A DNA stretch of 64,000 nucleotides from the IMG/VR virus record IMGVR_UViG_3300027754_000034, positions 1 through 64,000 of that record; one strand, given 5' to 3'. Of this stretch, positions 1 through 55,715 are shown piece after piece. Below the pieces are notes generated by a model. It made no database searches. It was not told where the DNA came from and worked only from the letters and a program-made list of their open reading frames with translations. The position numbers and the translations under genes were made by a program. Every line of letters begins with the position of its first letter. Position 1 is the stretch's first letter.

Positions 1-2140
<2,140 letters not shown>

Positions 2141-43980: not shown

Positions 43981-44628
43981 ATGCCAAAAGAGATATTCAA
44001 TAAAATGGGTTTTAATAACACTGCCACCATGAGTAGCACGATGGTAGAGTCCCTTTTTGGTATTAGCGGCGAGATTTTTTGGGAGTTAATAGATTCAAGG
44101 ACAGGTGAGACCACCAAGGGTCATATCAAAAACATAGTCACACTAGATGCAGGAATCCTGGTGGCTAGACTAATGAAATCTACGGCTACCCCAAATGTGT
44201 CCGAGCCGAAATTCGGAGTATATGCTTTAGCAGTAGGAACCGGTGATGTTGGCTGGAATCAAATGAACCCACCTCCTGCTAATGTTTACCAGCGTTCTCT
44301 ATATAATGAAATTGCTCGGAAAACCGTTGCTTCATCCTCATTTATAGACTCGGCAGGAGCTATTAGTGGTGTTCCTTCGCACGTAGTAGACTTTAATATT
44401 ACTTTCGCAGATAATGAGGCAGTCGGACCTCTTACTGAGATGGGATTACTGGGGGGAGATATTAATACTAATATGTCTATCCGCAATCCGGTTATGCCTC
44501 CGAATGGGTCATATGATCCCACAGCGGATGTTACTGGGAAAGATACCCTTTGCAATTATGTTACCTTCCCAGTATTAAACAAGCCACCGAGCAGTACTTT
44601 AAGCTGGACTTGGCGCTTAACTTTTTAG
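43981..44628 (+). CDS. Tail-collar fibre-like protein (DUF3751-like)
   Basis: NIVT...LAVGTG...LYNEIARK...EAVGPLTEMGLLGG...FPVLNK...LSWTWRLTF; RBS ggag. Confidence 0.7.
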   Translation: MPKEIFNKMGFNNTATMSSTMVESLFGISGEIFWELIDSRTGETTKGHIKNIVTLDAGILVARLMKSTATPNVSEPKFGVYALAVGTGDVGWNQMNPPPANVYQRSLYNEIARKTVASSSFIDSAGAISGVPSHVVDFNITFADNEAVGPLTEMGLLGGDINTNMSIRNPVMPPNGSYDPTADVTGKDTLCNYVTFPVLNKPPSSTLSWTWRLTF

Positions 44629-44644
44629 TGTATATTTAATATGT
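44613..44644 (+). repeat. End X, copy 1 (32-bp direct repeat)
   Basis: gcgcttaactttttagtgtatatttaatatgt, identical to 46556-46587; contains the last codons and stop of the collar gene, a TATATT box and ATG. Confidence 0.95.
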
Positions 44645-46541
44645 GAGAAAAGACATTTCCGGATTATTAGTTCATATAGATTTAGATGCGACAGAATTAA
44701 AATTTGGCGTCTTAAAAGACAATCAGTCAAGATGTGTCGTGTCTTGCCATGGGTGTCTAGAGACTCATGACTCTAAGATAATACTCTTAAAGAGTCATAT
44801 TTCAAAAAGGGAATTTTATTACTGTAGTAGCTGTTTAGGCAAAATGTCTTGGACAGAGGAAAAGAAGAAGAAAATTAAAGATTACTGGTCAGTCCCTGAA
44901 AATATATTGAAGGAGCATGAAATTAGAAAGGATAAATGGAAAAACGGAAAATATAGGTCTCAGATGGAAAATATTATCCAAGAAAGGTCTGCGACTCCAG
45001 CATTCAAGAATAAAATGTCCGTTTTATCTTTAAAGAAGTGGGAGGACCCTTCTTACCACTTAAATATCTCTGACCAGATTAAAAATAAGTGGGAAGACCC
45101 GGAATATCGTAATAAGCAGGAAGCTTATAAAACAGATGAGTGGAAGTCTGAGCATTCAAAAACGCAGACGTTACTTTGGACTGATGAAAGCTATAAACAG
45201 AACATATCACGTAAAATATCGGAAGCATGGAATGATGACGAATATAGGAATAATCAAGTAATTAAGCAGACACAGGTTTGGCTGAATCCTGATCATAAAG
45301 AAAAACAGTCACGCATGATGAAAGAAAAATGGAAAGATCCTTCTTTCAGAGCGAAATATGAAAATCTTTGGAAGTCTAAGTCATGGCGGAAAAACCTTTC
45401 CGACACTTTAAAGAAAATATGTAGTAATCCAGAATATAAAGCAAAATTAAGTGAAACCTCGAAATCTAGATGGGGAAATCCAGAATATAGAGAAAAAGTA
45501 TCAAAAGGGGTTAGTCGGGCGTGGGATGACCCCGATTACAGGCAAAATAAGGCAGAAAGTGCTAAGGCTTTTTGGGATAACGAAGATAATCGGCAAAAAT
45601 TTGCATTAATTAGAGCTGCTCAATCTGGACGTCGTTCTAATATTGAAAAAATAGTAAGCGAAATTTTAAAGGGATTAAATATTAATTTTGAAGAACAAAA
45701 AGCTCTTGGTGTTTATGTTTTTGATTTTTATCTCAATGAATATGATTTATATATAGAATGCCAGGGGGAATATTGGCATTCTTTGCCTGGTAGAAAAGAA
45801 AGAGATGCCGCAAAGTATACTTATCTTGAGAAGGCAGCTCCCAAGTCCAGAATTTTATATCTATATGAACATGAATTTATAAATCCCAATACTATATTAT
45901 CTAAATTAATGAATGCCACGATACCACAAAACATGCCAGGTAATGACTTTATTGAAAGCTTCAGATTTCAGGATCTGCTTATTAAGACAGTAGAAAGAGA
46001 GGAAGGAGCAAGTTTTTTAAATGCTTTTCACTATGCGGCGAATGGTAGGGCCGGGAAAAGTATTTATGGAGTCTATTTGGGTAGTGTGTTGATTGCTGTA
46101 GCGAAGTTTTCTTCCGTAATACGCCAAGAATCAGCTTCGTCATTAGGACTTCATCCGAAGAATGTTTGTGAATTGGATAGATTCTGCATTCATCCTAGAT
46201 ATCATAAACGAAATTTCGCTAGTTGGGTTTTGTCTAGAGTGACTAAAATGGTATTAAGTGACACTAGAATAAATTATATAATATCATTTGCAGATAGTAC
46301 CTATGGACATAATGGAACCATCTATAAAGCAGCCAATTGGGGGTACGTAAGTAATGTTAAGGCTGATTATTATTATGTGAATGAAGAAGGGTTTATCCTC
46401 CACAAGAAAACTCTTTATAATAGAGCAGTGAAGATGAAATGTACCGAAAAACAATATGCTGAAACACATAATTACATGAAATGCTGGGGCCGAGAAAAGT
46501 TCAAATTCATATACCCACGAATAGTAAAGACACTCTCCTAA
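44643..46541 (+). CDS. Fusion: Zn finger + 17-aa Trp repeats + Vsr/DUF559-like endonuclease + Mom-like GNAT DNA-modification domain
   Basis: CHGC...CSSC; WxDPxY repeats; SNIEKIV...FDFYL...IECQGEYWH...ERDAAK; FLNAFHY...YGVY...ELDRFC...NFASWVLSR...IISFADSTYGHNGTIYKAANW. Confidence 0.85.
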   Translation: MRKDISGLLVHIDLDATELKFGVLKDNQSRCVVSCHGCLETHDSKIILLKSHISKREFYYCSSCLGKMSWTEEKKKKIKDYWSVPENILKEHEIRKDKWKNGKYRSQMENIIQERSATPAFKNKMSVLSLKKWEDPSYHLNISDQIKNKWEDPEYRNKQEAYKTDEWKSEHSKTQTLLWTDESYKQNISRKISEAWNDDEYRNNQVIKQTQVWLNPDHKEKQSRMMKEKWKDPSFRAKYENLWKSKSWRKNLSDTLKKICSNPEYKAKLSETSKSRWGNPEYREKVSKGVSRAWDDPDYRQNKAESAKAFWDNEDNRQKFALIRAAQSGRRSNIEKIVSEILKGLNINFEEQKALGVYVFDFYLNEYDLYIECQGEYWHSLPGRKERDAAKYTYLEKAAPKSRILYLYEHEFINPNTILSKLMNATIPQNMPGNDFIESFRFQDLLIKTVEREEGASFLNAFHYAANGRAGKSIYGVYLGSVLIAVAKFSSVIRQESASSLGLHPKNVCELDRFCIHPRYHKRNFASWVLSRVTKMVLSDTRINYIISFADSTYGHNGTIYKAANWGYVSNVKADYYYVNEEGFILHKKTLYNRAVKMKCTEKQYAETHNYMKCWGREKFKFIYPRIVKTLS

Positions 46542-46555
46542 CCAAAATATATATA
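46469..46555 (+). repeat. End Y (87 bp: last codons of the fusion gene plus 14 nt downstream)
   Basis: Matches 47331-47416 with 6 substitutions and one 1-nt deletion. Confidence 0.93.
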
Positions 46556-46587
46556 GCGCTTAACTTTTTAGTGTATATTTAATATGT
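46556..46587 (+). repeat. End X, copy 2
   Basis: 32/32 identical to 44613-44644; supplies the ATG of the 156-aa gene. Confidence 0.95.
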
Positions 46588-47054
46588 TTGAATTGACTGA
46601 ATCAAGGTGGTGGTATTATCATGATTCTACGGCACATTTCACATTTGATGGTATTTTCGACGGGGAATCCTTCGTATTTGTAGTTCCAGTCAAATATAGT
46701 TTTTCTACAGAGGAAGATTCATATGGACTGATCCTTAACGTTCTTATCCCTGATGAGTCAGAATGTACCACTGGTGGCACTCTCAAATTAGATGGTGTTG
46801 AGGTCCCCAGAAGTGATGAACGTCATAAGAGATTCTTGAAGGAAAAAGACCTCAGCAACAAGCAGATCGGATGGTCTGCTTTATCTGATCAACTCCTTGA
46901 GTTCGTTACCGCTAATGTGGAGGCGTTGAACGAGAGATTAAGGGATGAGCGGGCCGATGACGAAGCTTATTGTGTGGAGCAGTGCCTCAAAGATCGCGCG
47001 CCGACCGATGACCTCCTCGCGCGCTTGAAGAAGCCCGATTCATTGTCGAACTAG
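46584..47054 (+). CDS. Hypothetical acidic protein (cargo of the second cassette)
   Basis: 156-aa ORF starting at the ATG within X; no SD; 3' part visibly more GC-rich than the neighbouring genes. Confidence 0.7.
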   Translation: MFELTESRWWYYHDSTAHFTFDGIFDGESFVFVVPVKYSFSTEEDSYGLILNVLIPDESECTTGGTLKLDGVEVPRSDERHKRFLKEKDLSNKQIGWSALSDQLLEFVTANVEALNERLRDERADDEAYCVEQCLKDRAPTDDLLARLKKPDSLSN

Positions 47055-47293
47055 ATCAATTGTGGATCCAAATGAGCGATCTTTGGAATTCATCTATTGC
47101 TCTATCATGATTTACATTTCTGCTAAAAAATTGAATGAAGGTACGTGAAGAGTTTTTCAGATATTGATTCATGAAGCTTGACGCTTGAACGGAGCGAAGC
47201 TAAACTTGCCGAAGCAAACCTGAACGAGCTGCCGTGGTTATTTTAGAGACGTTTAAAGATATAACGAGTTTTAGGAAGCTCTTTAAATTTACA

Positions 47294-47326
47294 AGACCAT
47301 GAAGAGCCACATGGTCTGCTTCTTTC
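47294..47326 (+). terminator. Possible intrinsic terminator at the end of the cargo
   Basis: agaccatg-aagagcca-catggtct (8-bp stem) followed by gcttctttc. Confidence 0.4.
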
Positions 47327-47330
47327 AGCC

Positions 47331-47416
47331 TAATTACAAGAAATGCTGGGCCGAGAGAAGTCCAAATTCGTATATCCACGAATAGTAAAGACACTCTCCT
47401 AACCAAAGTATATATA
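47331..47416 (+). pseudogene. End Y': frameshifted copy of the 3' end of the endonuclease-Mom gene
   Basis: taattacaagaaatgctgggccgagagaagtccaaattcgtatatccacgaatagtaaagacactctcctaaccaaagtatatata aligns to 46469-46555. Confidence 0.85.
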
Positions 47417-47484
47417 TTTTTAACCTATTTCAGGTGTAAAGTATGTAGGCTCTGATTTTTAAACAGAGTGGAAAAAGAGGAAAT

Positions 47485-47778
47485 ATGACTAAAAAAGAAC
47501 TGATTTCATCACTTGCTGCTTCAGCTGAACTGACTCACAACGATATTGCTAAGGTGCTCAAAGGCCTTACTGATGTTTGTCTGGATGAATTGAAGACGAA
47601 CAAGTCTTTCGTTCTTAACGATATGGTTCGACTCCGTTTAGTGGATAAGCCCGCTCTTCCGGCGCGTCAAATGAAGAGTCCTGCTACTGGTCAGATGATC
47701 AGTGTCCCGGCGAAGCCAGCAAGCAAGAAGCTCAAGGTGACTGTTGCAAAGCAGCTCCGAGATCTTGTTAAGGGCTGA
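47485..47778 (+). CDS. hup: HU/IHF-family histone-like DNA-binding protein
   Basis: MTKKELISSLA...KPALPARQMKSPATGQMISVPAKPASKKLKVTVAKQLRDLV; RBS gagg. Confidence 0.9.
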   Translation: MTKKELISSLAASAELTHNDIAKVLKGLTDVCLDELKTNKSFVLNDMVRLRLVDKPALPARQMKSPATGQMISVPAKPASKKLKVTVAKQLRDLVKG

Positions 47779-47812: not shown

Positions 47813-50374
47813 ATGATGGGCGGTTATGAGAATTTAGGGCCAATCATAAGCCAAAACCCCCAGGCGGTAACGCCTGGGGGCGGTAGTTATTCAGCTGATG
47901 AGAGATCATATGATTCCGTAGTATTCCAGCAGAATCATCCGCCAATGGACTGGGAGATGAATCTCATCCAGTCTGTGGTCGGCAATGCTGGTCTTAGAAA
48001 TCTAGCTTCTAAATTATTCAGCAGTACGTTCATATCCGGAAACGTATTAGAATCAAATGCTCCAGGAGCATTTTACGAATTTTTACCAGCAGTAGCTGGT
48101 AATGAAAACATTATTAGATTTTCGGCTTGTGATTTATTAGTAAACGGTTGGGCTCTTCGTTTAGAATATTCAAATACTGATGTCGATGGTAAGAACTTAG
48201 TTCAATTAACTGCTCCACCATTAACCGGTATTAGGCAGGATCTTCTAATATTAGAAGTATGGAGAGCACTGCTTTCTCCTCTCCCTTCTGTAGATAACAA
48301 GAGTCTGGGTGGCTTGATACTACGAAATGGTAATGCCAATGCTCCTGATACAGTAAACTTATCGGATGACCTAATAGACCCGAATTATCTAGCAGAGACA
48401 TCTAGAAGAGTTCAGATTCAGTATAGGATTCGCATCATAGAATCGGTAGACATTCTTTCCTATCCTGACGGCTTGGGCGATCCATCAATTACTGCACATA
48501 CGGTTCCATATCTTGGCGGTTCTGATGTAAATGGAAATGATTTGCCTGCGTACGTCTACACTGCCGTAGCTGGAGACTCAGGATTATGGCGTTCCGGGGC
48601 TGGAGACGCTGCTTCAGCCACTGATATAGGGTCAGTCGATGGCTATATATGTTCATTACCATTGTGTGTCGTAGTCAGACGTAATTCCGACACTTGGGAC
48701 AAAACCACAAATCTCAATGGTGGGGTATTAATCGGTGGAGTCAGTCCTCGACCAGACGGTTTATTTTCTGATCAGATAGCCTCGGGGGACCTAATAGATC
48801 TGAGAAAATATACTGCCTGGAATGCACAAGAATTCAAGAATGATGCTGTCGATGCATTAATGCAGAATTCCTTGTCCACCCAATATGAAGAATCTGCCTT
48901 GGGAACTGGCGGAAACACCTTCCTGATGAAGGATCCGATAGGTACTTCTTCACATATTTGGAATGCGGATGGTGTTAGAACCTCATATTCAGATAAACCA
49001 GTGGTTCATCCAATTGCGTTGTCATTTACTATTCCAATGGCAACCAATACACTGACTTGTGATCTCACTATAAATGTTGATTTGCCATGGGCTTCAGGTA
49101 TCAATATACTGGCAAATGCTCCTGCAGGAACCAATTTACTTAGCATTAGTAAATGCTTCATAAATGATGGCGTAGGAAACATTTATGATGCTTTTGATTC
49201 TTCCGTAGCCTATCACATATTAAACATAGTTTATTCTATTTCGGGAACGGAAATCGATACAGCCACCATAGAATTTAACCAAAATATTCCTGTCGGGACT
49301 GTTTTTTTAGAAGCTTTGGTAGAATATCCACCAAATGTGGGCCTTTCTAGAAATGTCATCTCAATAGATAAGGTCTGGGTTCCTAATAATTTTGATGCTT
49401 GGGTAGATACCTCGGAATTCACTGCCACATCAGATGCGGATCGTAGTAGCATAAATACTTCTTTTAATATTGATTTAGTAAATAGACAGGTTACGTTCGC
49501 TTATCCCTCGAATCTCATAAGCGATACGTTTTATAACCACACTCTCTCTCAATTCATGATCCCCGACTGTGTCGATGCAAGCAGCGTTGTGATTACAGGT
49601 AAAGCAGTGGTTGGGATTGAATATAATGCTGGTTGCACAGTCATAGAGTTTAATCCCCCTGAAATGGCTCTTGGTGTTGGACTAGCTGTCGATTATGTGG
49701 CTTATCGTCCACCAGTCCCATTAGGAATGGTGCCTTATGACTCTATCGATGTTTTTTATCAAACTCGATCGATTCAATCGATACCAGTTCCAGTAGGAAT
49801 GTATTCCCCATCATTTTATCGGCGTACAGATATTGAAAGAGTGTTCTTCATATCTTCCGGGTCTGGATCCTACGATTCAGCAGAATATGATGCTTCTACG
49901 CAATTAGCGATACCAAGACTTCCAATAGTCGATTATTCCGACAGTTTATTCTCTGGATACCATGAGTCTTCTGTCGTAACAAACGGTAATGATAATGGGA
50001 TCAGTGAAGTCTTAGTGACTGAGAAATCCTATTTGGCTTCTGACGGCTTTTATCTTTCTACCGCAGGTGGAACTACACAAGATGCTGATGGTAGGAATTA
50101 CTGGCCTTACTCGCCCAATATAATATTAAAAGCATTTAATGCTACTGATTTCAACATAAGCACTCGTCGTAAATTAGCTAGTGATTTCGTCTTGGAGCTT
50201 AAGGAAGATTTCCCATCACTTGGAAGGAAAGGAAGTCTTTATCTGGCTATGGCTACGGGTTATTCATATAACTCTCGCATAAATAAAATACATACTTCAG
50301 ATTCAGTAGAACTTGACGGAGTTTCCCTCTTCAGATTAAGGGGAAACCCACTTTATTATCGGAGGTCCTCTTGA
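47813..50374 (+). CDS. Tail fibre/baseplate anchor protein, paralog A
   Basis: YDSVVFQQNHPPMDWEMNL (DUF4815/DUF6519-like N-terminus), LEVW, ETSRRVQIQYRIR, GLWRSG, RPDGLFSDQI...DLIDLR. Confidence 0.7.
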   Translation: MMGGYENLGPIISQNPQAVTPGGGSYSADERSYDSVVFQQNHPPMDWEMNLIQSVVGNAGLRNLASKLFSSTFISGNVLESNAPGAFYEFLPAVAGNENIIRFSACDLLVNGWALRLEYSNTDVDGKNLVQLTAPPLTGIRQDLLILEVWRALLSPLPSVDNKSLGGLILRNGNANAPDTVNLSDDLIDPNYLAETSRRVQIQYRIRIIESVDILSYPDGLGDPSITAHTVPYLGGSDVNGNDLPAYVYTAVAGDSGLWRSGAGDAASATDIGSVDGYICSLPLCVVVRRNSDTWDKTTNLNGGVLIGGVSPRPDGLFSDQIASGDLIDLRKYTAWNAQEFKNDAVDALMQNSLSTQYEESALGTGGNTFLMKDPIGTSSHIWNADGVRTSYSDKPVVHPIALSFTIPMATNTLTCDLTINVDLPWASGINILANAPAGTNLLSISKCFINDGVGNIYDAFDSSVAYHILNIVYSISGTEIDTATIEFNQNIPVGTVFLEALVEYPPNVGLSRNVISIDKVWVPNNFDAWVDTSEFTATSDADRSSINTSFNIDLVNRQVTFAYPSNLISDTFYNHTLSQFMIPDCVDASSVVITGKAVVGIEYNAGCTVIEFNPPEMALGVGLAVDYVAYRPPVPLGMVPYDSIDVFYQTRSIQSIPVPVGMYSPSFYRRTDIERVFFISSGSGSYDSAEYDASTQLAIPRLPIVDYSDSLFSGYHESSVVTNGNDNGISEVLVTEKSYLASDGFYLSTAGGTTQDADGRNYWPYSPNIILKAFNATDFNISTRRKLASDFVLELKEDFPSLGRKGSLYLAMATGYSYNSRINKIHTSDSVELDGVSLFRLRGNPLYYRRSS

Positions 50375-51083: not shown

Positions 51084-54000
51084 ATGCCCATTAATCCACT
51101 CGGAGCCGGAGTAAGCAGATACATTAATGATAGAGACCGGCAGTATGCTGCTGTAGTTTTTCAGGTTGGTAAGCCACCCCTGGATTCTGAATTAAATTTA
51201 ATATCTCTCATTGATTTAGAGTCCAAAGCTGAGGAAGCACGCAGCCGCGTGGCATCCGGCTGGCTGATGAATGAAATAAACCCTTATGCTGATTTCTTAA
51301 CCCGGCCAGAATTTTCGAATCAGTTTTATTTCGGTAATAACTTCGCTGGAGAGTCCCGCAATATCACTTGGGCCATAGTAAATGGATGGCCCATACCTGT
51401 AGCAGGTACCAAAACGGGCGCTCCTCCATTAGCTGCTAATAATGTCGACTATTGGAATCGAATTACCCTAAACCCTCCATCCACTTCTACTGGCGGCAAT
51501 AGAGCAGAATTTGCTTTTCTAGAAGTTTGGCTTCAGCGTGTTGATGTAGACCCAGCAGCACCAGCAATTGCTCCTGGAAAACCGCTACGTGGTTATATAT
51601 ATAAATTTGGCAATGTAGAGGGTGGATTTTCCCCACTGCCAGATGAATTGGTAGACCCCGACATTAATTTTGAGACCACCAAGCGTGTTCAAATACAATA
51701 CAGAATCCGCGTTGTTGCTGATATTAATTTAGTATCCAATCCCGAGGGATTCGATCCTACATTAGTGTTTGCTCAGGGTAGCCTTTCAGGCCCGTCAGTC
51801 GTTCCATTCTCCAATATGCGAGAAGCCTTAGGCGACCCAGGATTGTGGCGTGCTGGAACCGGCGACCCAACTACTTTCGGAACTGCAGATGGGTTCGTAT
51901 ATGCTATACCGATTTGTGGTGTTTTTAGAAGAAATGCTGCGGGATTCAGCGACGTCGGTAACTTAGCTGGTTCATTTAATAGAAATTCAAAGGCTTTAAC
52001 GCGGGTGAATGCACTCACATTTACCGCTCCCATCGCCTTGCAAGCTAGTTTATCCTCTTTCGCTACTAGCTTTTCCATAGCCAGCATATCCGGAACTCCT
52101 CTAGATACCTTGACCTCATTTGGTGAGGCATACTTTAGAATAGATGATGAGATAGTAAGAGTCACCAGCGTAATTCAGATATCAGCCATAAATTATACAA
52201 TCAATATTGAAAGAGGGCAACTTAATACAATAGCACGCTCACATTTATTCGGGACCGAGTTATTTATATATACTGTTCGGCCAGACGGGTTGTTTGCGGA
52301 TCAGGTGTCCAATACTGATATTTTAGACTTGCGTCACTCAATAGCTGATAAATTTGATTATGATAGCATACTTCAATCTAACGTCGTAGAATTACTCAAA
52401 GGAAACCTACGAAGTACCTGGAAGAGGTACGGCACAACCAACACTGCTGGTCCAGTAATCCTATATGGTGATAGAATCACAGATTCTTCAATATTTACGG
52501 GCGGTCTTACTAGACTAGATGCTCCAGATGGTAATCGCAGAGCATACTCAGATGCCTCTGTAATGCAAAAATTCGTATTACCCGTCACAGTTCCTAGCAA
52601 TTCCCTCACACTAGGGAATAATATCCAGACCACTGTCAGTCCATATACTGGGACAGTAGTATGGTCCGGATCAGCTCCCGCTCACCCAACTGGTAGCCGA
52701 CTTAACGGTACTTACCCAACTTGGTGGAACGGCGACCAAATCACGGTAAACATACTTCCATTCCAAAATGGTGTTTCGATTGCTGATGCAAATCAGATAA
52801 GATTTATTACCCCATCAGAATTATCGGATTCTATCCTCGTTAGATTCGAGGGAATGACATCTGATCCTAACGGGGGTGATCCACTAGAATTACCCCCAAC
52901 CGCTCCAACAGCTTCGGACCCTTATTTAAACATCCCGATTTCTGGTCAAAGAATACTTAGAAACGGACAAGGAATCAGTGTAGTCGTTGATGGTTCCGGT
53001 AATCTAGTGATTACTTTAGCTAGCGGCGCTATCGATTCTGAATTCCAAGAATTCGTAGATGCTATTCAGGGAGAAACCGATCCAGGTCGAGTATCTCAGT
53101 ACAAGATGTATGTGGAGTTTACTGTTCTATATGGAACTGGTCGTGGTCTATCTCACCGACCCGACTGGATCCATATGGTCCAGTATAGAGGAACCCCGAC
53201 TAACGTAACAAAGACTCTACGTCGTAGTGGTCTTTCTACACTGTCGCCAATGGTACCTACCTACATAGGCGATTCTCCATTAGTTCAGACCGGAAACGAT
53301 CGTAATTTAGCCAAAACGTCGGAGGTCATGTTTGATCCCGGCTCTAAAACTGTTTACGTCGCTCCATACAGAATGCTGACCATTCCTCCTCTGGTTGCCA
53401 GGAATGGTGCTCTACTAAATTGGTATAATGGTGGAGCGAACACCCAAGGCTCAATGCCGCAATTAGACCAGGATGGCGTGAATACCGTTCATCCTGTTGT
53501 TGATCCCCTTACACTCTTCTTCACGGGGTCTGTTACTAAGTATGTCGAATTACCATTCCAGTACTTACCAAAACCAGGATTTCATTATGTTCCAATAGTT
53601 CCGATTACTGATTTGGTATATTCATCAGGTATCAATTTCCTAATGAAGTCGAGCCAGGGAGTTGTAGGAAATACTCCGGACTATAACCGAAATTATGTCT
53701 CCTACCCAGCCAATACCCCCGGTTACTATATAGTGACACCGGAAGTAGGAGAAGTGTATGGAAATAGCAACGGTAATAAATCCATATACGGTGAAAAGAT
53801 AACGATAGAAAAGGTAACAGGTAGAGAGGGACAGGCTTTTAAGGGAATCAAATTTCCACCCTTCTTAGGACCGGCAAGAATTACTGGCATTTATCTCAGA
53901 AGTGGTCTTGATGTCTCTCCCGCTTCCACTCCCTTTAATAATGACCGAATATTTATTGGTGGGATAGGGACAGACGTCAATCTTCTGCGAGACAGCTTCG

Positions 54001-55715
54001 ACGGACCAACGTTCCTCTTGGACGTTGATACGAACGGGGATCTATACTTTGTATTAAATGCCGAGGTTATAGACTTCAAGAGAGCTCCTGCAGGAACCAC
54101 TTTTGATAACGCACAATTCCTGGTCGAATGCACTTTGTTTTCTTATGACCGAGGATTCCTCCAGACAAATGGTCGCATTCTTTGCGCTAGAACGCTAGGA
54201 TCATCTGTAGCTCAGACTATTCCGGGATGGGACGGTTATTTATCTACGAACTTTAGCGTTTCCACGTTAGGTTTAATAGTCCCTGCTCCTTTGAGTGATA
54301 TCGCGAGTAACAACGAGGTAACTCTATACTACTCTCGGTCTCCATATCAGGGAGACCCATTCGGCACCCAGACAGCGTATTCCGATGATCCTTATAGACT
54401 CGGACCTCTGACTACTGGAGAGGCTTTAACTCTTCATAATAGTCCTCTTGGTCCTGTTCAAACACTAACTCTTCCCAATAAGGGGAATTTCGAAATATTA
54501 AGCTCTGTACGATTCGTGACTAGTCTTGGAACTGGTCGACTTTCGGGAGCGAATCCAATACCACTGCTTCTTCCCAGCGAGTCACCACTAAATCCTCCTG
54601 ACTACGCAGGAACTCTAGTGGACCAGACTAGAGAATATTCATTAAATCGAGTCGGCTATGACGACTGGTTTACTTCGAAATGGCCGTCAGATCCATCCTC
54701 ATTATCCACTAGGCCCCCTACGGTTCCGGGGGCTATTTCAGAACGTTTCGATAATGATATACATCCGGAATTTGCAGGGTGTGTTTCTAATTTACCTCTT
54801 GGTGCTTATTTTAGAGATAAGGACTTCGTAGGTAAAACTCTTTATCAAATGCGAACAGCAAGTAATATCGGCGGAAATCCCGTTGGTACACTCACCTTCA
54901 CCAATTATGAAGCGTCAATGGTTAAGGGCGTTGACGGTAGGTCTACCTGGCAAGGTCGAGATTATCTTTGCGGTAATAGTAGTAGTACATCAGGGTTCGG
55001 CACAGAATCATTAGCAAGAGTTGATGGAACCTATAATCTAGGTGATACCAAGGTCTTTAAGACCACTCGTGGCGGGGCTGCTTATTCCACCACTGGTCCT
55101 TGGCCTGGTGGAATACTAACTGGTTCATTCATCAAGACAAGACCAAATTCCGATGTTGGTGCAGTCTTACTTTGCAATGCCTATCTCGTAAGATCTCATC
55201 CTGAACAGTCACAGGGTGTAGAACTTCATCCCGGCAATGAACTACAAATGATACTGGTAACGCAGGCCGTTCCGGCTTATTTGCGGGACAATGAAATAGT
55301 TCATTCAGCTAGCGGAATCAGTGAGGGATATACTGCAGTAGAAAGATATAGGTTATTGGGGAAGCCTTTAGAAAAGCGGAGAGGCAGACTACCTAATGAC
55401 GTTTTGCCAGCAGGCAAGCCCTTGTACGGAAATAATACTTCGTTGCTGTTCGGTTCAGCTGATCCACCATTGGTGGCTGCAATACAAGAATCGATAGCTG
55501 TACTGGTTGACCTTCAAACAGTATTTGATTTATCGAAGAAGCCTGCAGACCCCTCCACAGTACAGATGTTCGTAAATGGAGTTAAACTCCAATACGGAAT
55601 AGATTATACCGTGGGTGGCGTTGATGATAAGGTCGTTACATATAGTCCTAGCCCTCCCGTTAGACCGGAATTATTAACCACTGATCTTGTGGAATTCTGG
55701 TATTTGGCTATCTAG
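51084..55715 (+). CDS. Tail fibre/baseplate anchor protein, paralog B (1543 aa)
   Basis: YAAVVFQVGKPPLDSELNL, LEVW, ETTKRVQIQYRIR, GLWRAG, RPDGLFADQV...DILDLR; C-terminal MFVNGVKLQYGIDYTV module. Confidence 0.75.
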   Translation: MPINPLGAGVSRYINDRDRQYAAVVFQVGKPPLDSELNLISLIDLESKAEEARSRVASGWLMNEINPYADFLTRPEFSNQFYFGNNFAGESRNITWAIVNGWPIPVAGTKTGAPPLAANNVDYWNRITLNPPSTSTGGNRAEFAFLEVWLQRVDVDPAAPAIAPGKPLRGYIYKFGNVEGGFSPLPDELVDPDINFETTKRVQIQYRIRVVADINLVSNPEGFDPTLVFAQGSLSGPSVVPFSNMREALGDPGLWRAGTGDPTTFGTADGFVYAIPICGVFRRNAAGFSDVGNLAGSFNRNSKALTRVNALTFTAPIALQASLSSFATSFSIASISGTPLDTLTSFGEAYFRIDDEIVRVTSVIQISAINYTINIERGQLNTIARSHLFGTELFIYTVRPDGLFADQVSNTDILDLRHSIADKFDYDSILQSNVVELLKGNLRSTWKRYGTTNTAGPVILYGDRITDSSIFTGGLTRLDAPDGNRRAYSDASVMQKFVLPVTVPSNSLTLGNNIQTTVSPYTGTVVWSGSAPAHPTGSRLNGTYPTWWNGDQITVNILPFQNGVSIADANQIRFITPSELSDSILVRFEGMTSDPNGGDPLELPPTAPTASDPYLNIPISGQRILRNGQGISVVVDGSGNLVITLASGAIDSEFQEFVDAIQGETDPGRVSQYKMYVEFTVLYGTGRGLSHRPDWIHMVQYRGTPTNVTKTLRRSGLSTLSPMVPTYIGDSPLVQTGNDRNLAKTSEVMFDPGSKTVYVAPYRMLTIPPLVARNGALLNWYNGGANTQGSMPQLDQDGVNTVHPVVDPLTLFFTGSVTKYVELPFQYLPKPGFHYVPIVPITDLVYSSGINFLMKSSQGVVGNTPDYNRNYVSYPANTPGYYIVTPEVGEVYGNSNGNKSIYGEKITIEKVTGREGQAFKGIKFPPFLGPARITGIYLRSGLDVSPASTPFNNDRIFIGGIGTDVNLLRDSFDGPTFLLDVDTNGDLYFVLNAEVIDFKRAPAGTTFDNAQFLVECTLFSYDRGFLQTNGRILCARTLGSSVAQTIPGWDGYLSTNFSVSTLGLIVPAPLSDIASNNEVTLYYSRSPYQGDPFGTQTAYSDDPYRLGPLTTGEALTLHNSPLGPVQTLTLPNKGNFEILSSVRFVTSLGTGRLSGANPIPLLLPSESPLNPPDYAGTLVDQTREYSLNRVGYDDWFTSKWPSDPSSLSTRPPTVPGAISERFDNDIHPEFAGCVSNLPLGAYFRDKDFVGKTLYQMRTASNIGGNPVGTLTFTNYEASMVKGVDGRSTWQGRDYLCGNSSSTSGFGTESLARVDGTYNLGDTKVFKTTRGGAAYSTTGPWPGGILTGSFIKTRPNSDVGAVLLCNAYLVRSHPEQSQGVELHPGNELQMILVTQAVPAYLRDNEIVHSASGISEGYTAVERYRLLGKPLEKRRGRLPNDVLPAGKPLYGNNTSLLFGSADPPLVAAIQESIAVLVDLQTVFDLSKKPADPSTVQMFVNGVKLQYGIDYTVGGVDDKVVTYSPSPPVRPELLTTDLVEFWYLAI

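What the first reader, a model, noticed from the sequence alone, without database searches (positions are those of the whole stretch)
44613..47446. Tandem cassettes with shared ends: X-[nuclease/Mom]-Y followed directly by X-[foreign cargo]-Y'
Seen: X (32 bp, identical copies at 44613 and 46556) includes the last codons of the collar gene, a -10-like box and ATG. Y (87 bp) is the fusion gene's 3' end and recurs as Y' (47331-47416; 6 substitutions, 1 deletion). Y abuts X with no gap and the interiors (about 1.8 kb vs 0.74 kb) are unrelated. X supplies the cargo's in-frame ATG, whereas in unit 1 the same ATG is followed by TGA and the fusion starts at an overlapping GTG. A degenerate X-like sequence (ttaacctatttcaggtgtaaagtatgt) follows Y' before HU. 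Inference: an autonomous element plus a non-autonomous derivative that captures and expresses passenger genes, with no transposase or integrase in view. X-X or Y-Y' recombination would excise one unit cleanly. A one-off duplication followed by replacement is the simpler alternative.
Basis: partly seen in the sequence, partly recalled or inferred. Interest (0 to 1): 0.85.

Follow-up and report, generated by a model that had tools for sequence, protein, structure and literature searches.

The report
Stacked homing-endonuclease gene and its relic
In a huge phage, a mobile nuclease gene fused to a DNA-modification (Mom) domain sits at its usual landing spot behind a baseplate gene, directly followed by the gutted remains of a second copy that now carries a truncated duplicate of another gene from the same phage; this is a new variant of known selfish-gene behaviour, not a new kind of mobile element.

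Summary
The repeats are real: X (32 nt) is identical at 44613 and 46556, and Y/Y' match at 92%.

X is the left end of a mobile gene. The 632-aa fusion has a zinc ribbon, 17-aa repeats, a Vsr-like nuclease closest to homing endonuclease I-Bth0305I, and a Mom domain. It is present or absent in related huge phages, always directly after the same baseplate-like gene. The homology break falls at one nucleotide position, and the insert brings replacement codons for that gene's end. GIY-YIG endonuclease genes occupy the same spot in other relatives.

Unit 2 is the relic of a second fusion copy. It keeps X and the last 24 codons. Its interior now holds a 5'-truncated, diverged paralogue of a gene that lies beside a second nuclease-Mom gene in the same genome. 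So the cargo is not foreign.

Best reading: re-invasion, or nuclease-triggered duplication, at a homing site, followed by decay of one copy.

X and Y occur nowhere else, and no relative shows other cargo between such ends. This does not support a cassette-capture system.

Verdict: new variant of a known kind.

The parts
Its last four codons and stop lie inside X1.
   Evidence: PHROG 5417. tblastn hits Bacillus phage G gp190 and a 'virion structural protein'. AF2 model pLDDT 84.5. Fold matches A511 gp105 and the phi812 baseplate arm, E 3e-5. BFVD hits include tail-collar-fibre and baseplate proteins.
44613..44644 (+). X1, the left end of the mobile fusion gene. It holds replacement codons R-L-T-F-stop for p215, a 13-nt spacer and ATG(T), overlapping the fusion's GTG start.
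   Evidence: The filled-versus-empty comparison L013/L008 shows that this stretch arrives with the insert. The CGC codon is found in 9/9 fusion-bearing versus 4/46 other loci.
44643..46541 (+). Fusion gene, 632 aa: an intact free-standing homing-endonuclease-like gene with a C-terminal Mom domain.
   Evidence: Pfam Mom 90.9 bits, with weak DUF559/Vsr hits. PHROG 559 and 1384. About 60 full-length homologues. Syntenic presence/absence in relatives.
44745..44834 (+). Four-cysteine zinc-ribbon-like motif (C35, C38, C61, C64).
   Evidence: Invariant in 30 family members.
44850..45542 (+). Array of ~17-aa (51-nt) 'W-x-D-P-E-Y-R' repeats, presumed to bind DNA. The same module occurs in GIY-YIG and HNH endonucleases.
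   Evidence: Pfam GerD-like hit. Co-occurs with GIY-YIG, NUMOD and HNH domains in hits. Shared with the L067 GIY-YIG gene, E 2e-7. Repeats seen.
45594..45902 (+). Vsr-like nuclease domain of the EDxHD type (I-Bth0305I-like).
   Evidence: Family profile A3 hits 3r3p (I-Bth0305I catalytic domain) at E 2.6e-9. D361, E372, H379 and D388 are invariant.
45963..46517 (+). Mom (methylcarbamoylase-like, GNAT-fold) domain.
   Evidence: PF25680 at E 1e-25. PDB 8bv8 Mom at E 1e-5.
46469..46555 (+). Y: the last 24 codons of the fusion, its stop and 14 nt.
46556..46587 (+). X2, an exact second copy of X. It begins at the same nucleotide (third base of the Trp codon) as the insert boundary in other lineages.
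46584..47054 (+). Cargo ORF, 156 aa. Residues 2-114 are a diverged, 5'-truncated paralogue of P0076. The ATG comes from X. The last 42 residues are of unknown origin.
   Evidence: Only relative is P0076, 59% identity. DNA 46628-46901 matches L092 3140-3425 at 75%. dN/dS 0.41-0.51. No Pfam, PHROG or NCBIfam hit. AF2 pLDDT 48.
47055..47330 (+). Non-coding tail of unit 2 with a terminator-like hairpin at 47294-47317.
   Evidence: dG -16.6, z -2.1. No match in relatives. No Rfam or tRNA hit.
47331..47416 (+). Y': a frameshifted relic of the 3' end of a second fusion-gene copy.
   Evidence: 92% identical to Y. Six of the 7 differences lie in the first 46 nt. It starts at the same His codon as the L033 remnant.
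47417..47446 (+). Not significant; this is ordinary spacer upstream of HU. Only the TGTAAAGTA box is shared with the HU leaders of L019 and L011.
47485..47778 (+). HU-like DNA-binding protein, the right flank of the variable region.
   Evidence: PF00216. Orthologues in L019 and L011.
47813..50374 (+). 853-aa conserved structural gene. In most relatives it follows p215 directly, so it marks the right anchor of the hotspot.

Best explanation
The 3' end of the baseplate-like gene p215 is a homing site.

The 632-aa fusion gene is a free-standing homing-endonuclease gene of the Vsr-like (EDxHD, I-Bth0305I) kind that also carries a Mom DNA-modification domain. Its mobile segment begins right after the Trp codon four codons before the p215 stop. 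It brings its own copy of those codons, the stop and a short leader; together these are X.

The window's phage holds two stacked insertions at this site. The downstream one (unit 2) is older or from another allele, and it has decayed. Everything between the leader's ATG and the last 24 codons was replaced by a 5'-truncated copy of a P0076-like gene plus about 430 nt of unknown origin ending in a hairpin. P0076 lies next to the genome's second nuclease-Mom gene.

The upstream one (unit 1) is an intact copy. It was placed in front of the relic by a break at the homing-site boundary. The left side was repaired from a fusion-bearing template, and the right side was joined without homology. This left the resident sequence intact from the break onward, which accounts for the exact Y|X junction.

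Shown here: the anatomy, the homologies, the site-specific presence/absence, the common breakpoint and the origin of the cargo. Inferred: cleavage by the encoded nuclease, the order of events and the repair route.
For: 1. Nuclease identity. The family profile hits the I-Bth0305I catalytic domain (3r3p) at E 2.6e-9. D361, E372, H379 and D388 are invariant, as are four Cys. The DNA-binding region lies N-terminal to the nuclease, as in that family (PMC3239194).

2. Site-specific presence/absence.
- L013 equals L008 plus the fusion. Flanks are 96-98% identical, and 1904 nt replace 50 nt.
- Other filled/unfilled pairs are L017/L067 and L033/L063.
- Filled lineages are scattered on the p215 tree and need at least 4-5 changes.
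- Most of about 50 loci are empty, and L019 is an empty p215-HU site.

3. Common boundary. Homology breaks right after TGG in all three pairs. The duplicated p215 ends in the window (X2) and in L011 start at the same base. The CGC codon travels with the fusion, Fisher 1e-7.

4. L011 is an independent case of a one-sided join. It reads p215, fusion, truncated HU, then a second p215 end (R-L-T-F-stop) with an L019-type spacer, then HU99.

5. The site is a hotspot for endonuclease genes. GIY-YIG genes with the same repeat module sit there in L023, L030, L036 and L067.

6. Decay. L033 keeps only the fusion's N-terminal 52 and C-terminal ~20 residues.

7. Divergence is uneven. Six of 46 nt differ in the conserved coding part of Y', against 1 of 73 in the rest of Y plus X (Fisher 0.013). 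This fits a different allele sitting in the same flanks.

8. Cargo origin.

9. Precedents. A neighbouring endonuclease gene mobilises a defunct one (mobE, PMC2790892). An endonuclease drives tandem amplification (SegB, PMC13096335).
Against: - No cleavage has been shown. The nuclease could serve the Mom domain rather than homing.
- Re-invasion requires a break at a site that already carries X, which should be immune if immunity rests on sequence.
- X1 and X2 are identical, while Y and Y' differ by 8%. That is only marginally unlikely under one age (P 0.07) and could reflect gene conversion or selection.
- The uneven divergence rests on 7 differences.
- All fusion alleles are 51% identical or less to each other, so no recent donor has been seen.
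- The stacked arrangement is known from one phage population only.
Confidence: 0.6

Rival explanations
1. Intragenomic tandem duplication. A single resident X-fusion-Y unit was duplicated head to tail, possibly stimulated by the gene's own nuclease as with T6 SegB. The interior of copy 2 was then replaced by the paralogue fragment.
For: - X1 and X2 are identical, and the units are directly abutting.
- SegB-dependent tandem repeats of an endonuclease locus have been shown experimentally (PMC13096335).
- The breakpoint at the homing-site boundary fits a nuclease-made break.
- The cargo comes from the same genome.
Against: - Divergence is concentrated in the coding part of Y' (Fisher 0.013), whereas equal-age copies should diverge evenly.
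- There is no microhomology at the Y|X junction, unlike the SegB case.
- L011 shows that inter-genome one-sided joins do happen at this site.
Confidence: 0.27
2. X and Y are cis-acting ends of a cassette family: an autonomous unit plus non-autonomous units that capture passenger genes and are moved in trans, in the manner of an integron or a MITE.
For: - Two independent derivatives (window unit 2 and the L033 mini-ORF) keep both gene ends. Their retained 3' pieces start at the same His codon.
- X donates the cargo's start codon.
- Trans mobilisation of a dead neighbour is known (PMC2790892).
Against: - X and Y are found only at this locus in the 257 kb genome and in IMG/VR.
- No other cargo lies between such ends in about 50 related loci.
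- The third X copy is chance.
- There are no inverted repeats at the unit ends, and no domain match in the flanking genes scanned.
- Homing needs flanking homology, not element ends.
Confidence: 0.08
3. Recombination between repeated regulatory cassettes (PeSL-like). X would be a promoter-bearing motif, and exchange between copies would shuffle genes.
For: - X has an AT-rich -10-like stretch, and unit 2 ends with a hairpin.
- PeSLs mediate such shuffling and form mini-circles in T4-type phages (PMC2839356, PMC4122927).
Against: - X is not dispersed, with just two copies, both here.
- No sigma-70-type promoter was called at X.
- Half of X is coding sequence of p215.
- X travels with the fusion gene in other lineages.
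Confidence: 0.03
4. Assembly artefact that merges two strain variants.
For: The data are metagenomic, and the two records may come from related samples.
Against: - The same structure appears in two assembly records.
- Exact repeats are 32 nt or shorter.
- The Y|X junction is a novel sequence that neither single-unit variant would contain.
Confidence: 0.02

Closest known systems
EDxHD (Vsr-like) homing endonucleases, prototype I-Bth0305I of Bacillus phage 0305phi8-36 (PMC3239194; family first described in PMC2677866)
   Same: - The catalytic domain is homologous (profile E 2.6e-9 to 3r3p).
- The DNA-binding region lies N-terminal to the nuclease.
- The host is a phage.
- The paper says family members also occur as free-standing genes.
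- I-Bth0305I cuts right next to its insertion point, which matches the single-base boundary seen here.
   Different: - This gene is not in an intron or intein.
- The DNA-binding part is a zinc ribbon plus a long array of 17-aa repeats rather than two NUMOD2 motifs.
- A whole Mom domain is fused to the C-terminus.
- Cleavage is untested.
Free-standing homing endonuclease genes of T4-type phages (seg and mob genes); trans-homing of defunct I-TevIII by mobE (PMC2790892; review PMC2988022)
   Same: - An intergenic insert between conserved genes, with a sporadic distribution.
- Flanking sequence is co-converted.
- An intact endonuclease gene lies next to a dead one and can carry it along.
   Different: - The nuclease family differs.
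- Here the dead neighbour is a relic of the same gene stacked at the same site.
- The insert rewrites the last four codons of the target gene.
SegB-driven segmental amplification in phage T6 (PMC13096335)
   Same: Head-to-tail repeats of a segment that contains the endonuclease gene, arising at the gene's own locus.
   Different: - There are only two units here, and the second has lost the gene.
- There is no junction microhomology.
- No selective driver is known.
PeSL promoter-terminator cassettes of T4-like phages (PMC2839356, PMC4122927)
   Same: Short shared sequences bracket ORFan genes in a variable region. Excision by repeat recombination is conceivable.
   Different: PeSLs are dispersed in many copies and are purely regulatory. 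X and Y are unique to this locus and are gene ends.
Phage Mu Mom (PMC7261163; PDB 8bv8)
   Same: Homologous domain (PF25680 at 90.9 bits; 8bv8 at E 1e-5).
   Different: Mu Mom is a stand-alone protein of about 230 aa. Here it is the C-terminal third of a nuclease protein that behaves as a mobile gene.

Membership tests
EDxHD / Vsr-like homing endonucleases | Catalytic domain homologous to I-Bth0305I / Vsr | tested here: met
   Profile A3 against PDB: 3r3p at E 2.6e-9 over 94 residues; Vsr 1cw0 only E 0.4. Weak Pfam DUF559/Vsr hits.
EDxHD / Vsr-like homing endonucleases | Conserved catalytic acidic and His residues (composite EDxHD motif) | tested here: inconclusive
   D361, E372, H379 and D388 are invariant in 30 members. 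They were not mapped one by one onto the published motif.
EDxHD / Vsr-like homing endonucleases | N-terminal DNA-binding region followed by the nuclease | tested here: met
   Four-Cys motif and repeat array precede the nuclease. The repeat type is shared with GIY-YIG and HNH genes.
EDxHD / Vsr-like homing endonucleases | Site-specific cleavage of the allele that lacks the gene | not testable with these tools
   Needs enzyme assays on L019- or L008-type target DNA.
Free-standing homing endonuclease gene | Lies between genes, not inside an intron or intein | tested here: met
   The gene starts after the p215 stop. No Rfam intron hit.
Free-standing homing endonuclease gene | Sporadic presence/absence at one fixed site among relatives | tested here: met
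   At least 4-5 changes on the p215 tree.
Free-standing homing endonuclease gene | Flank co-conversion or altered target sequence in carriers | tested here: met
   The p215 end is replaced together with the insert. CGC codon in 9/9 versus 4/46, P 1e-7.
Free-standing homing endonuclease gene | Super-Mendelian inheritance in mixed infection | not testable with these tools
   The phage is uncultured.
Mom family | PF25680 above the gathering score; similarity to solved Mom | tested here: met
   90.9 bits against a cutoff of 27.1. 8bv8 at E 1e-5.
Mom family | Adenine methylcarbamoylation of DNA | not testable with these tools
   Needs nucleoside analysis of the DNA.
   The inverted-repeat scan found no pair at the unit ends. 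The scanned flanking genes gave no recombinase domain; most gave no domain hit at all.
   X and Y occur only at this locus. No other such unit in about 50 loci. The third X copy is chance.
PeSL regulatory cassettes | Many dispersed copies of a promoter plus stem-loop motif | tested here: not met
   Two copies of X, both here. No promoter called at X.
SegB-type segmental amplification | Tandem units that each contain the endonuclease gene, joined at microhomology | tested here: not met
   Unit 2 lacks the gene body, and the Y|X junction has no microhomology. An ancestral two-copy state cannot be excluded.

The most novel reading that the evidence does not exclude
The nuclease-Mom genes are single-chain, restriction-modification-like homing elements. 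The Mom domain marks the carrier genome so that it escapes the nuclease. Their ends define trans-mobilisable 'mini' units: the leader X and the last ~24 codons are kept in two independent derivatives with the same 3' breakpoint. Such units pick up fragments from other nuclease-cut loci, which would explain why the cargo derives from the neighbour of the genome's second nuclease-Mom gene.
Probability: 0.12. Interest if true: 0.8.

Novelty: new variant of a known kind. Interest (0 to 1): 0.55.

Why it matters
- It identifies a family of about 60 huge-phage genes, annotated only as 'very-short-patch-repair endonuclease' or 'GNAT', as likely mobile homing genes that carry a DNA-modification enzyme in the same polypeptide. 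My literature searches found no description of this combination.
- It pins their landing site to a single base in a baseplate gene, which makes cleavage and immunity directly testable.
- It gives a natural snapshot of the homing-gene life cycle, with invasion, decay and re-invasion stacked at one site.
- It shows how such a site can create a new ORF: a truncated paralogue given a start codon by the element's leader.
- It corrects the reading of a new cassette-capture system.

Tried and rejected
- megablast of the locus against 50,697 phage records: no match.
- Exact X and Y scans of IMG/VR: only the phage itself and its sibling contig.
- TGTAAAGTA as a phage-wide promoter motif: not enriched.
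- Word-indexed protein search for the cargo: self only. The exhaustive search was needed to find P0076.
- Protein atlas for the cargo: scores below 0.8 and TM below 0.5, so no lead.
- AF2 of the cargo without an alignment: pLDDT 48. I ran no fold search on it because matches would be meaningless.
- Unit-2 interior against all relatives by blastn and tblastx: nothing credible.
- Rfam and tRNA scans of the locus: nothing.
- Self-comparison of every other filled locus for shared ends: only the 51-nt coding repeats.
- Composition as a marker of foreignness: not informative.
- The 565-aa versus 632-aa gene call in the sibling contig: only a start-codon choice, since the DNA is identical there.
- Synonymous versus non-synonymous pattern in Y/Y': 2 synonymous, 3 replacement, 1 frameshift, 1 non-coding. 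Too few to decide.
- The genome-contig collection was not scanned.

Full report
**Observation**

The window is the first 64 kb of a 257,205-bp viral contig; coordinates coincide. It belongs to a clade of huge phages, with relatives on contigs of 240-530 kb.

X is 32 nt and identical at 44613 and 46556. Y (46469-46555) and Y' (47331-47416) differ by 6 substitutions and 1 deletion. Neither repeat has any other copy in the window, and no shuffle gave 2 matches. Exact scans of IMG/VR, which include the whole 257 kb contig, find X and Y only at this locus and in a sibling contig.

The sibling assembly record has the same tandem arrangement. It differs at 2 of 20,645 bases, both outside the locus. 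Exact repeats are 32 nt or shorter, and the Y|X junction is a sequence that neither single-unit variant would contain. I therefore discount an assembly artefact.

**What unit 1 is**

The 632-aa ORF has four parts:
- four invariant cysteines near the N-terminus;
- an array of 17-aa W-x-D-P-E-Y-R repeats;
- a Vsr-like nuclease domain;
- a Mom domain.

A profile of the nuclease domain finds the catalytic domain of I-Bth0305I (3r3p) at E 2.6e-9. I-Bth0305I is the prototype of the EDxHD homing endonucleases of phages. They have an N-terminal DNA-binding part, cut next to their insertion point, and also occur free-standing (PMC3239194).

About 60 full-length homologues exist, many on contigs of 300-380 kb. 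More distant members sit at other genomic sites, for example after a sigma-70-like gene.

**It is a site-specific presence/absence gene**

I collected about 50 distinct loci that encode the upstream 215-aa protein, p215.
- In most, the conserved 853-aa gene follows within 2-200 nt.
- L019 has p215, an 84-nt spacer, HU and then the 853-aa gene.
- The fusion is present in at least seven lineages, always starting 15-64 nt after the p215 stop, whatever lies downstream.
- On a p215 tree these lineages are scattered and need at least 4-5 gains or losses.

The closest pair is L013 and L008. Their flanks are 96-98% identical, and L013 has 1904 nt where L008 has 50. The break lies right after the Trp codon four codons before the stop. 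The insert brings its own codons (R-L-S-F-stop in place of R-I-T-T-stop) and a leader nearly identical to the window's X.

The pairs L017/L067 and L033/L063 break at the same place. The Arg codon CGC at that position is found in 9/9 fusion-bearing sequences against 4/46 others (P 1e-7). So X is the left end of the mobile gene, not a free-standing repeat.

**The site is a hotspot**

In L023, L030, L036 and L067, a GIY-YIG endonuclease gene with the same repeat module occupies the same position.

p215 itself models well (pLDDT 84.5). Its fold resembles baseplate protein gp105 of phage A511 and the phi812 baseplate arm.

**An independent precedent for an imperfect insertion**

L011 is the window's nearest relative; its fusion is 50% identical. 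It reads: p215, fusion, a 72-codon truncated HU that is the orthologue of the window's HU, then a second p215 end encoding R-L-T-F-stop with an L019-type spacer, then a divergent HU.

That second end starts at the same base as the window's X2, and it differs in sequence from the first. So it came from another genome. A break at this position, repaired from a fusion-bearing template on the left and joined without homology on the right, explains both loci.

**What unit 2 is**

Y' is a frameshifted copy of the last 24 codons of a fusion gene. X2 is the leader.

The interior is not foreign by composition: GC is 0.45, against 0.43 and 0.47 for the neighbouring genes.

The word-indexed search found no relative of the cargo. 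The exhaustive search found exactly one, P0076, with 59% identity over cargo residues 2-114. P0076 is encoded in the same contig at about 254 kb. It lies 520 nt from a second nuclease-Mom gene that has a different repeat module, DUF7487.

The DNA match is 75% over 287 nt. Homology starts at codon 2, so the cargo is a 5'-truncated paralogue lacking 56 residues, and its start codon is the ATG of X. dN/dS is 0.41-0.51.

The last 42 codons, 276 nt of non-coding DNA and a terminator-like hairpin have no known origin. The cargo's function is unknown.

**A second relic**

L033 carries a 90-aa ORF that joins the fusion's first 52 residues to its last ~20. Its retained 3' piece begins at the same His codon as Y'. 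I cannot explain this coincidence. It is the best argument that the gene's 3' end matters in cis.

**Order of events**

Of the 7 Y/Y' differences, 6 fall in the first 46 nt, the conserved coding part. Only 1 falls in the remaining 41 nt, and none in X (Fisher 0.013). This suggests a different fusion allele sitting in the same flanks, and so favours re-invasion over an in-place duplication. It rests on few sites, however, and gene conversion could mimic it.

A nuclease-triggered duplication, as shown for SegB in T6 (PMC13096335), remains a serious rival. Either way, the junction coincides with the homing-site boundary, so the event was not a random one-off.

With an intact gene next to it, unit 2 would be carried along during homing, as mobE carries the defunct I-TevIII (PMC2790892). 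That step is inference.

**Against a cassette-capture system**

- There is no other X...Y unit anywhere.
- No relative has different cargo between such ends.
- No inverted repeats mark the unit ends, and no recombinase was seen among the flanking genes scanned.
- X is not dispersed, unlike PeSLs (PMC2839356).

**Verdict**

This is a new variant of a known kind. It is a Vsr-like homing-endonuclease gene fused to Mom, stacked on the relic of a second copy that now expresses, or at least encodes, a truncated internal paralogue.

The nuclease-Mom architecture as a mobile gene appears undescribed in the papers I could search. It is the more interesting part of the finding.

Noticed in passing
L092:4061-5965 (minus strand); contig about 251.2-253.1 kb, outside the window: A second nuclease-Mom gene (634 aa) in the same phage. 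It has a different N-terminal repeat module (DUF7487) and is 36% identical to the first over the nuclease and Mom parts. The cargo's only relative (P0076, L092:2925-3539) lies 520 nt from its 3' end, convergently oriented.
   Followed up: partly
L067:7603-8577, L023:1780-2733, L030:7628-8557, L036:5890-6882: GIY-YIG endonuclease genes carrying the same W-x-D-P-E-F-R repeat module sit at exactly the position that the fusion gene occupies in sister phages. Two nuclease families share one homing site and one DNA-binding module.
   Followed up: partly
L011:3865-4180: A truncated HU gene (72 codons) is followed by a duplicated end of the baseplate-like gene and then a second, divergent HU gene. This is the scar of an inter-genome insertion.
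   Followed up: yes
L033:6610-7528: A 90-aa in-frame mini-derivative of the fusion gene is followed by a 214-aa ORF with a D...E-x-K-like motif and no Pfam hit. It may be another nuclease.
   Followed up: partly
L013:5240-5698: Perfect 83-nt and 36-nt repeats at 51-nt spacing inside the repeat array of the L013 fusion gene. The presumed DNA-binding array is expanding by recent unit duplication.
   Followed up: no
window 1-397: A 153-nt tandem repeat, 2.6 copies at 96% identity, lies at the very start of the contig. It could relate to a genome end or replication origin.
   Followed up: no
window 423-1077: A long array of 9/18/27-nt periodic repeats overlaps the ORF at 408-1295. It looks like a collagen-like or similar triplet-repeat protein.
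   Followed up: no
window 47813-50374 and 51084-55715: The 853-aa and 1543-aa proteins share a homologous N-terminal ~300 residues (about 31-34% identity via their L007/L008 orthologues). They appear to be paralogous structural proteins.
   Followed up: no
L065:7537-9583 and L066:8494-10905: Downstream of the fusion gene these two near-identical phages carry a run of small ORFs (71-124 aa). L066 has one extra 122-aa ORF, so small-gene turnover continues behind the insert.
   Followed up: no
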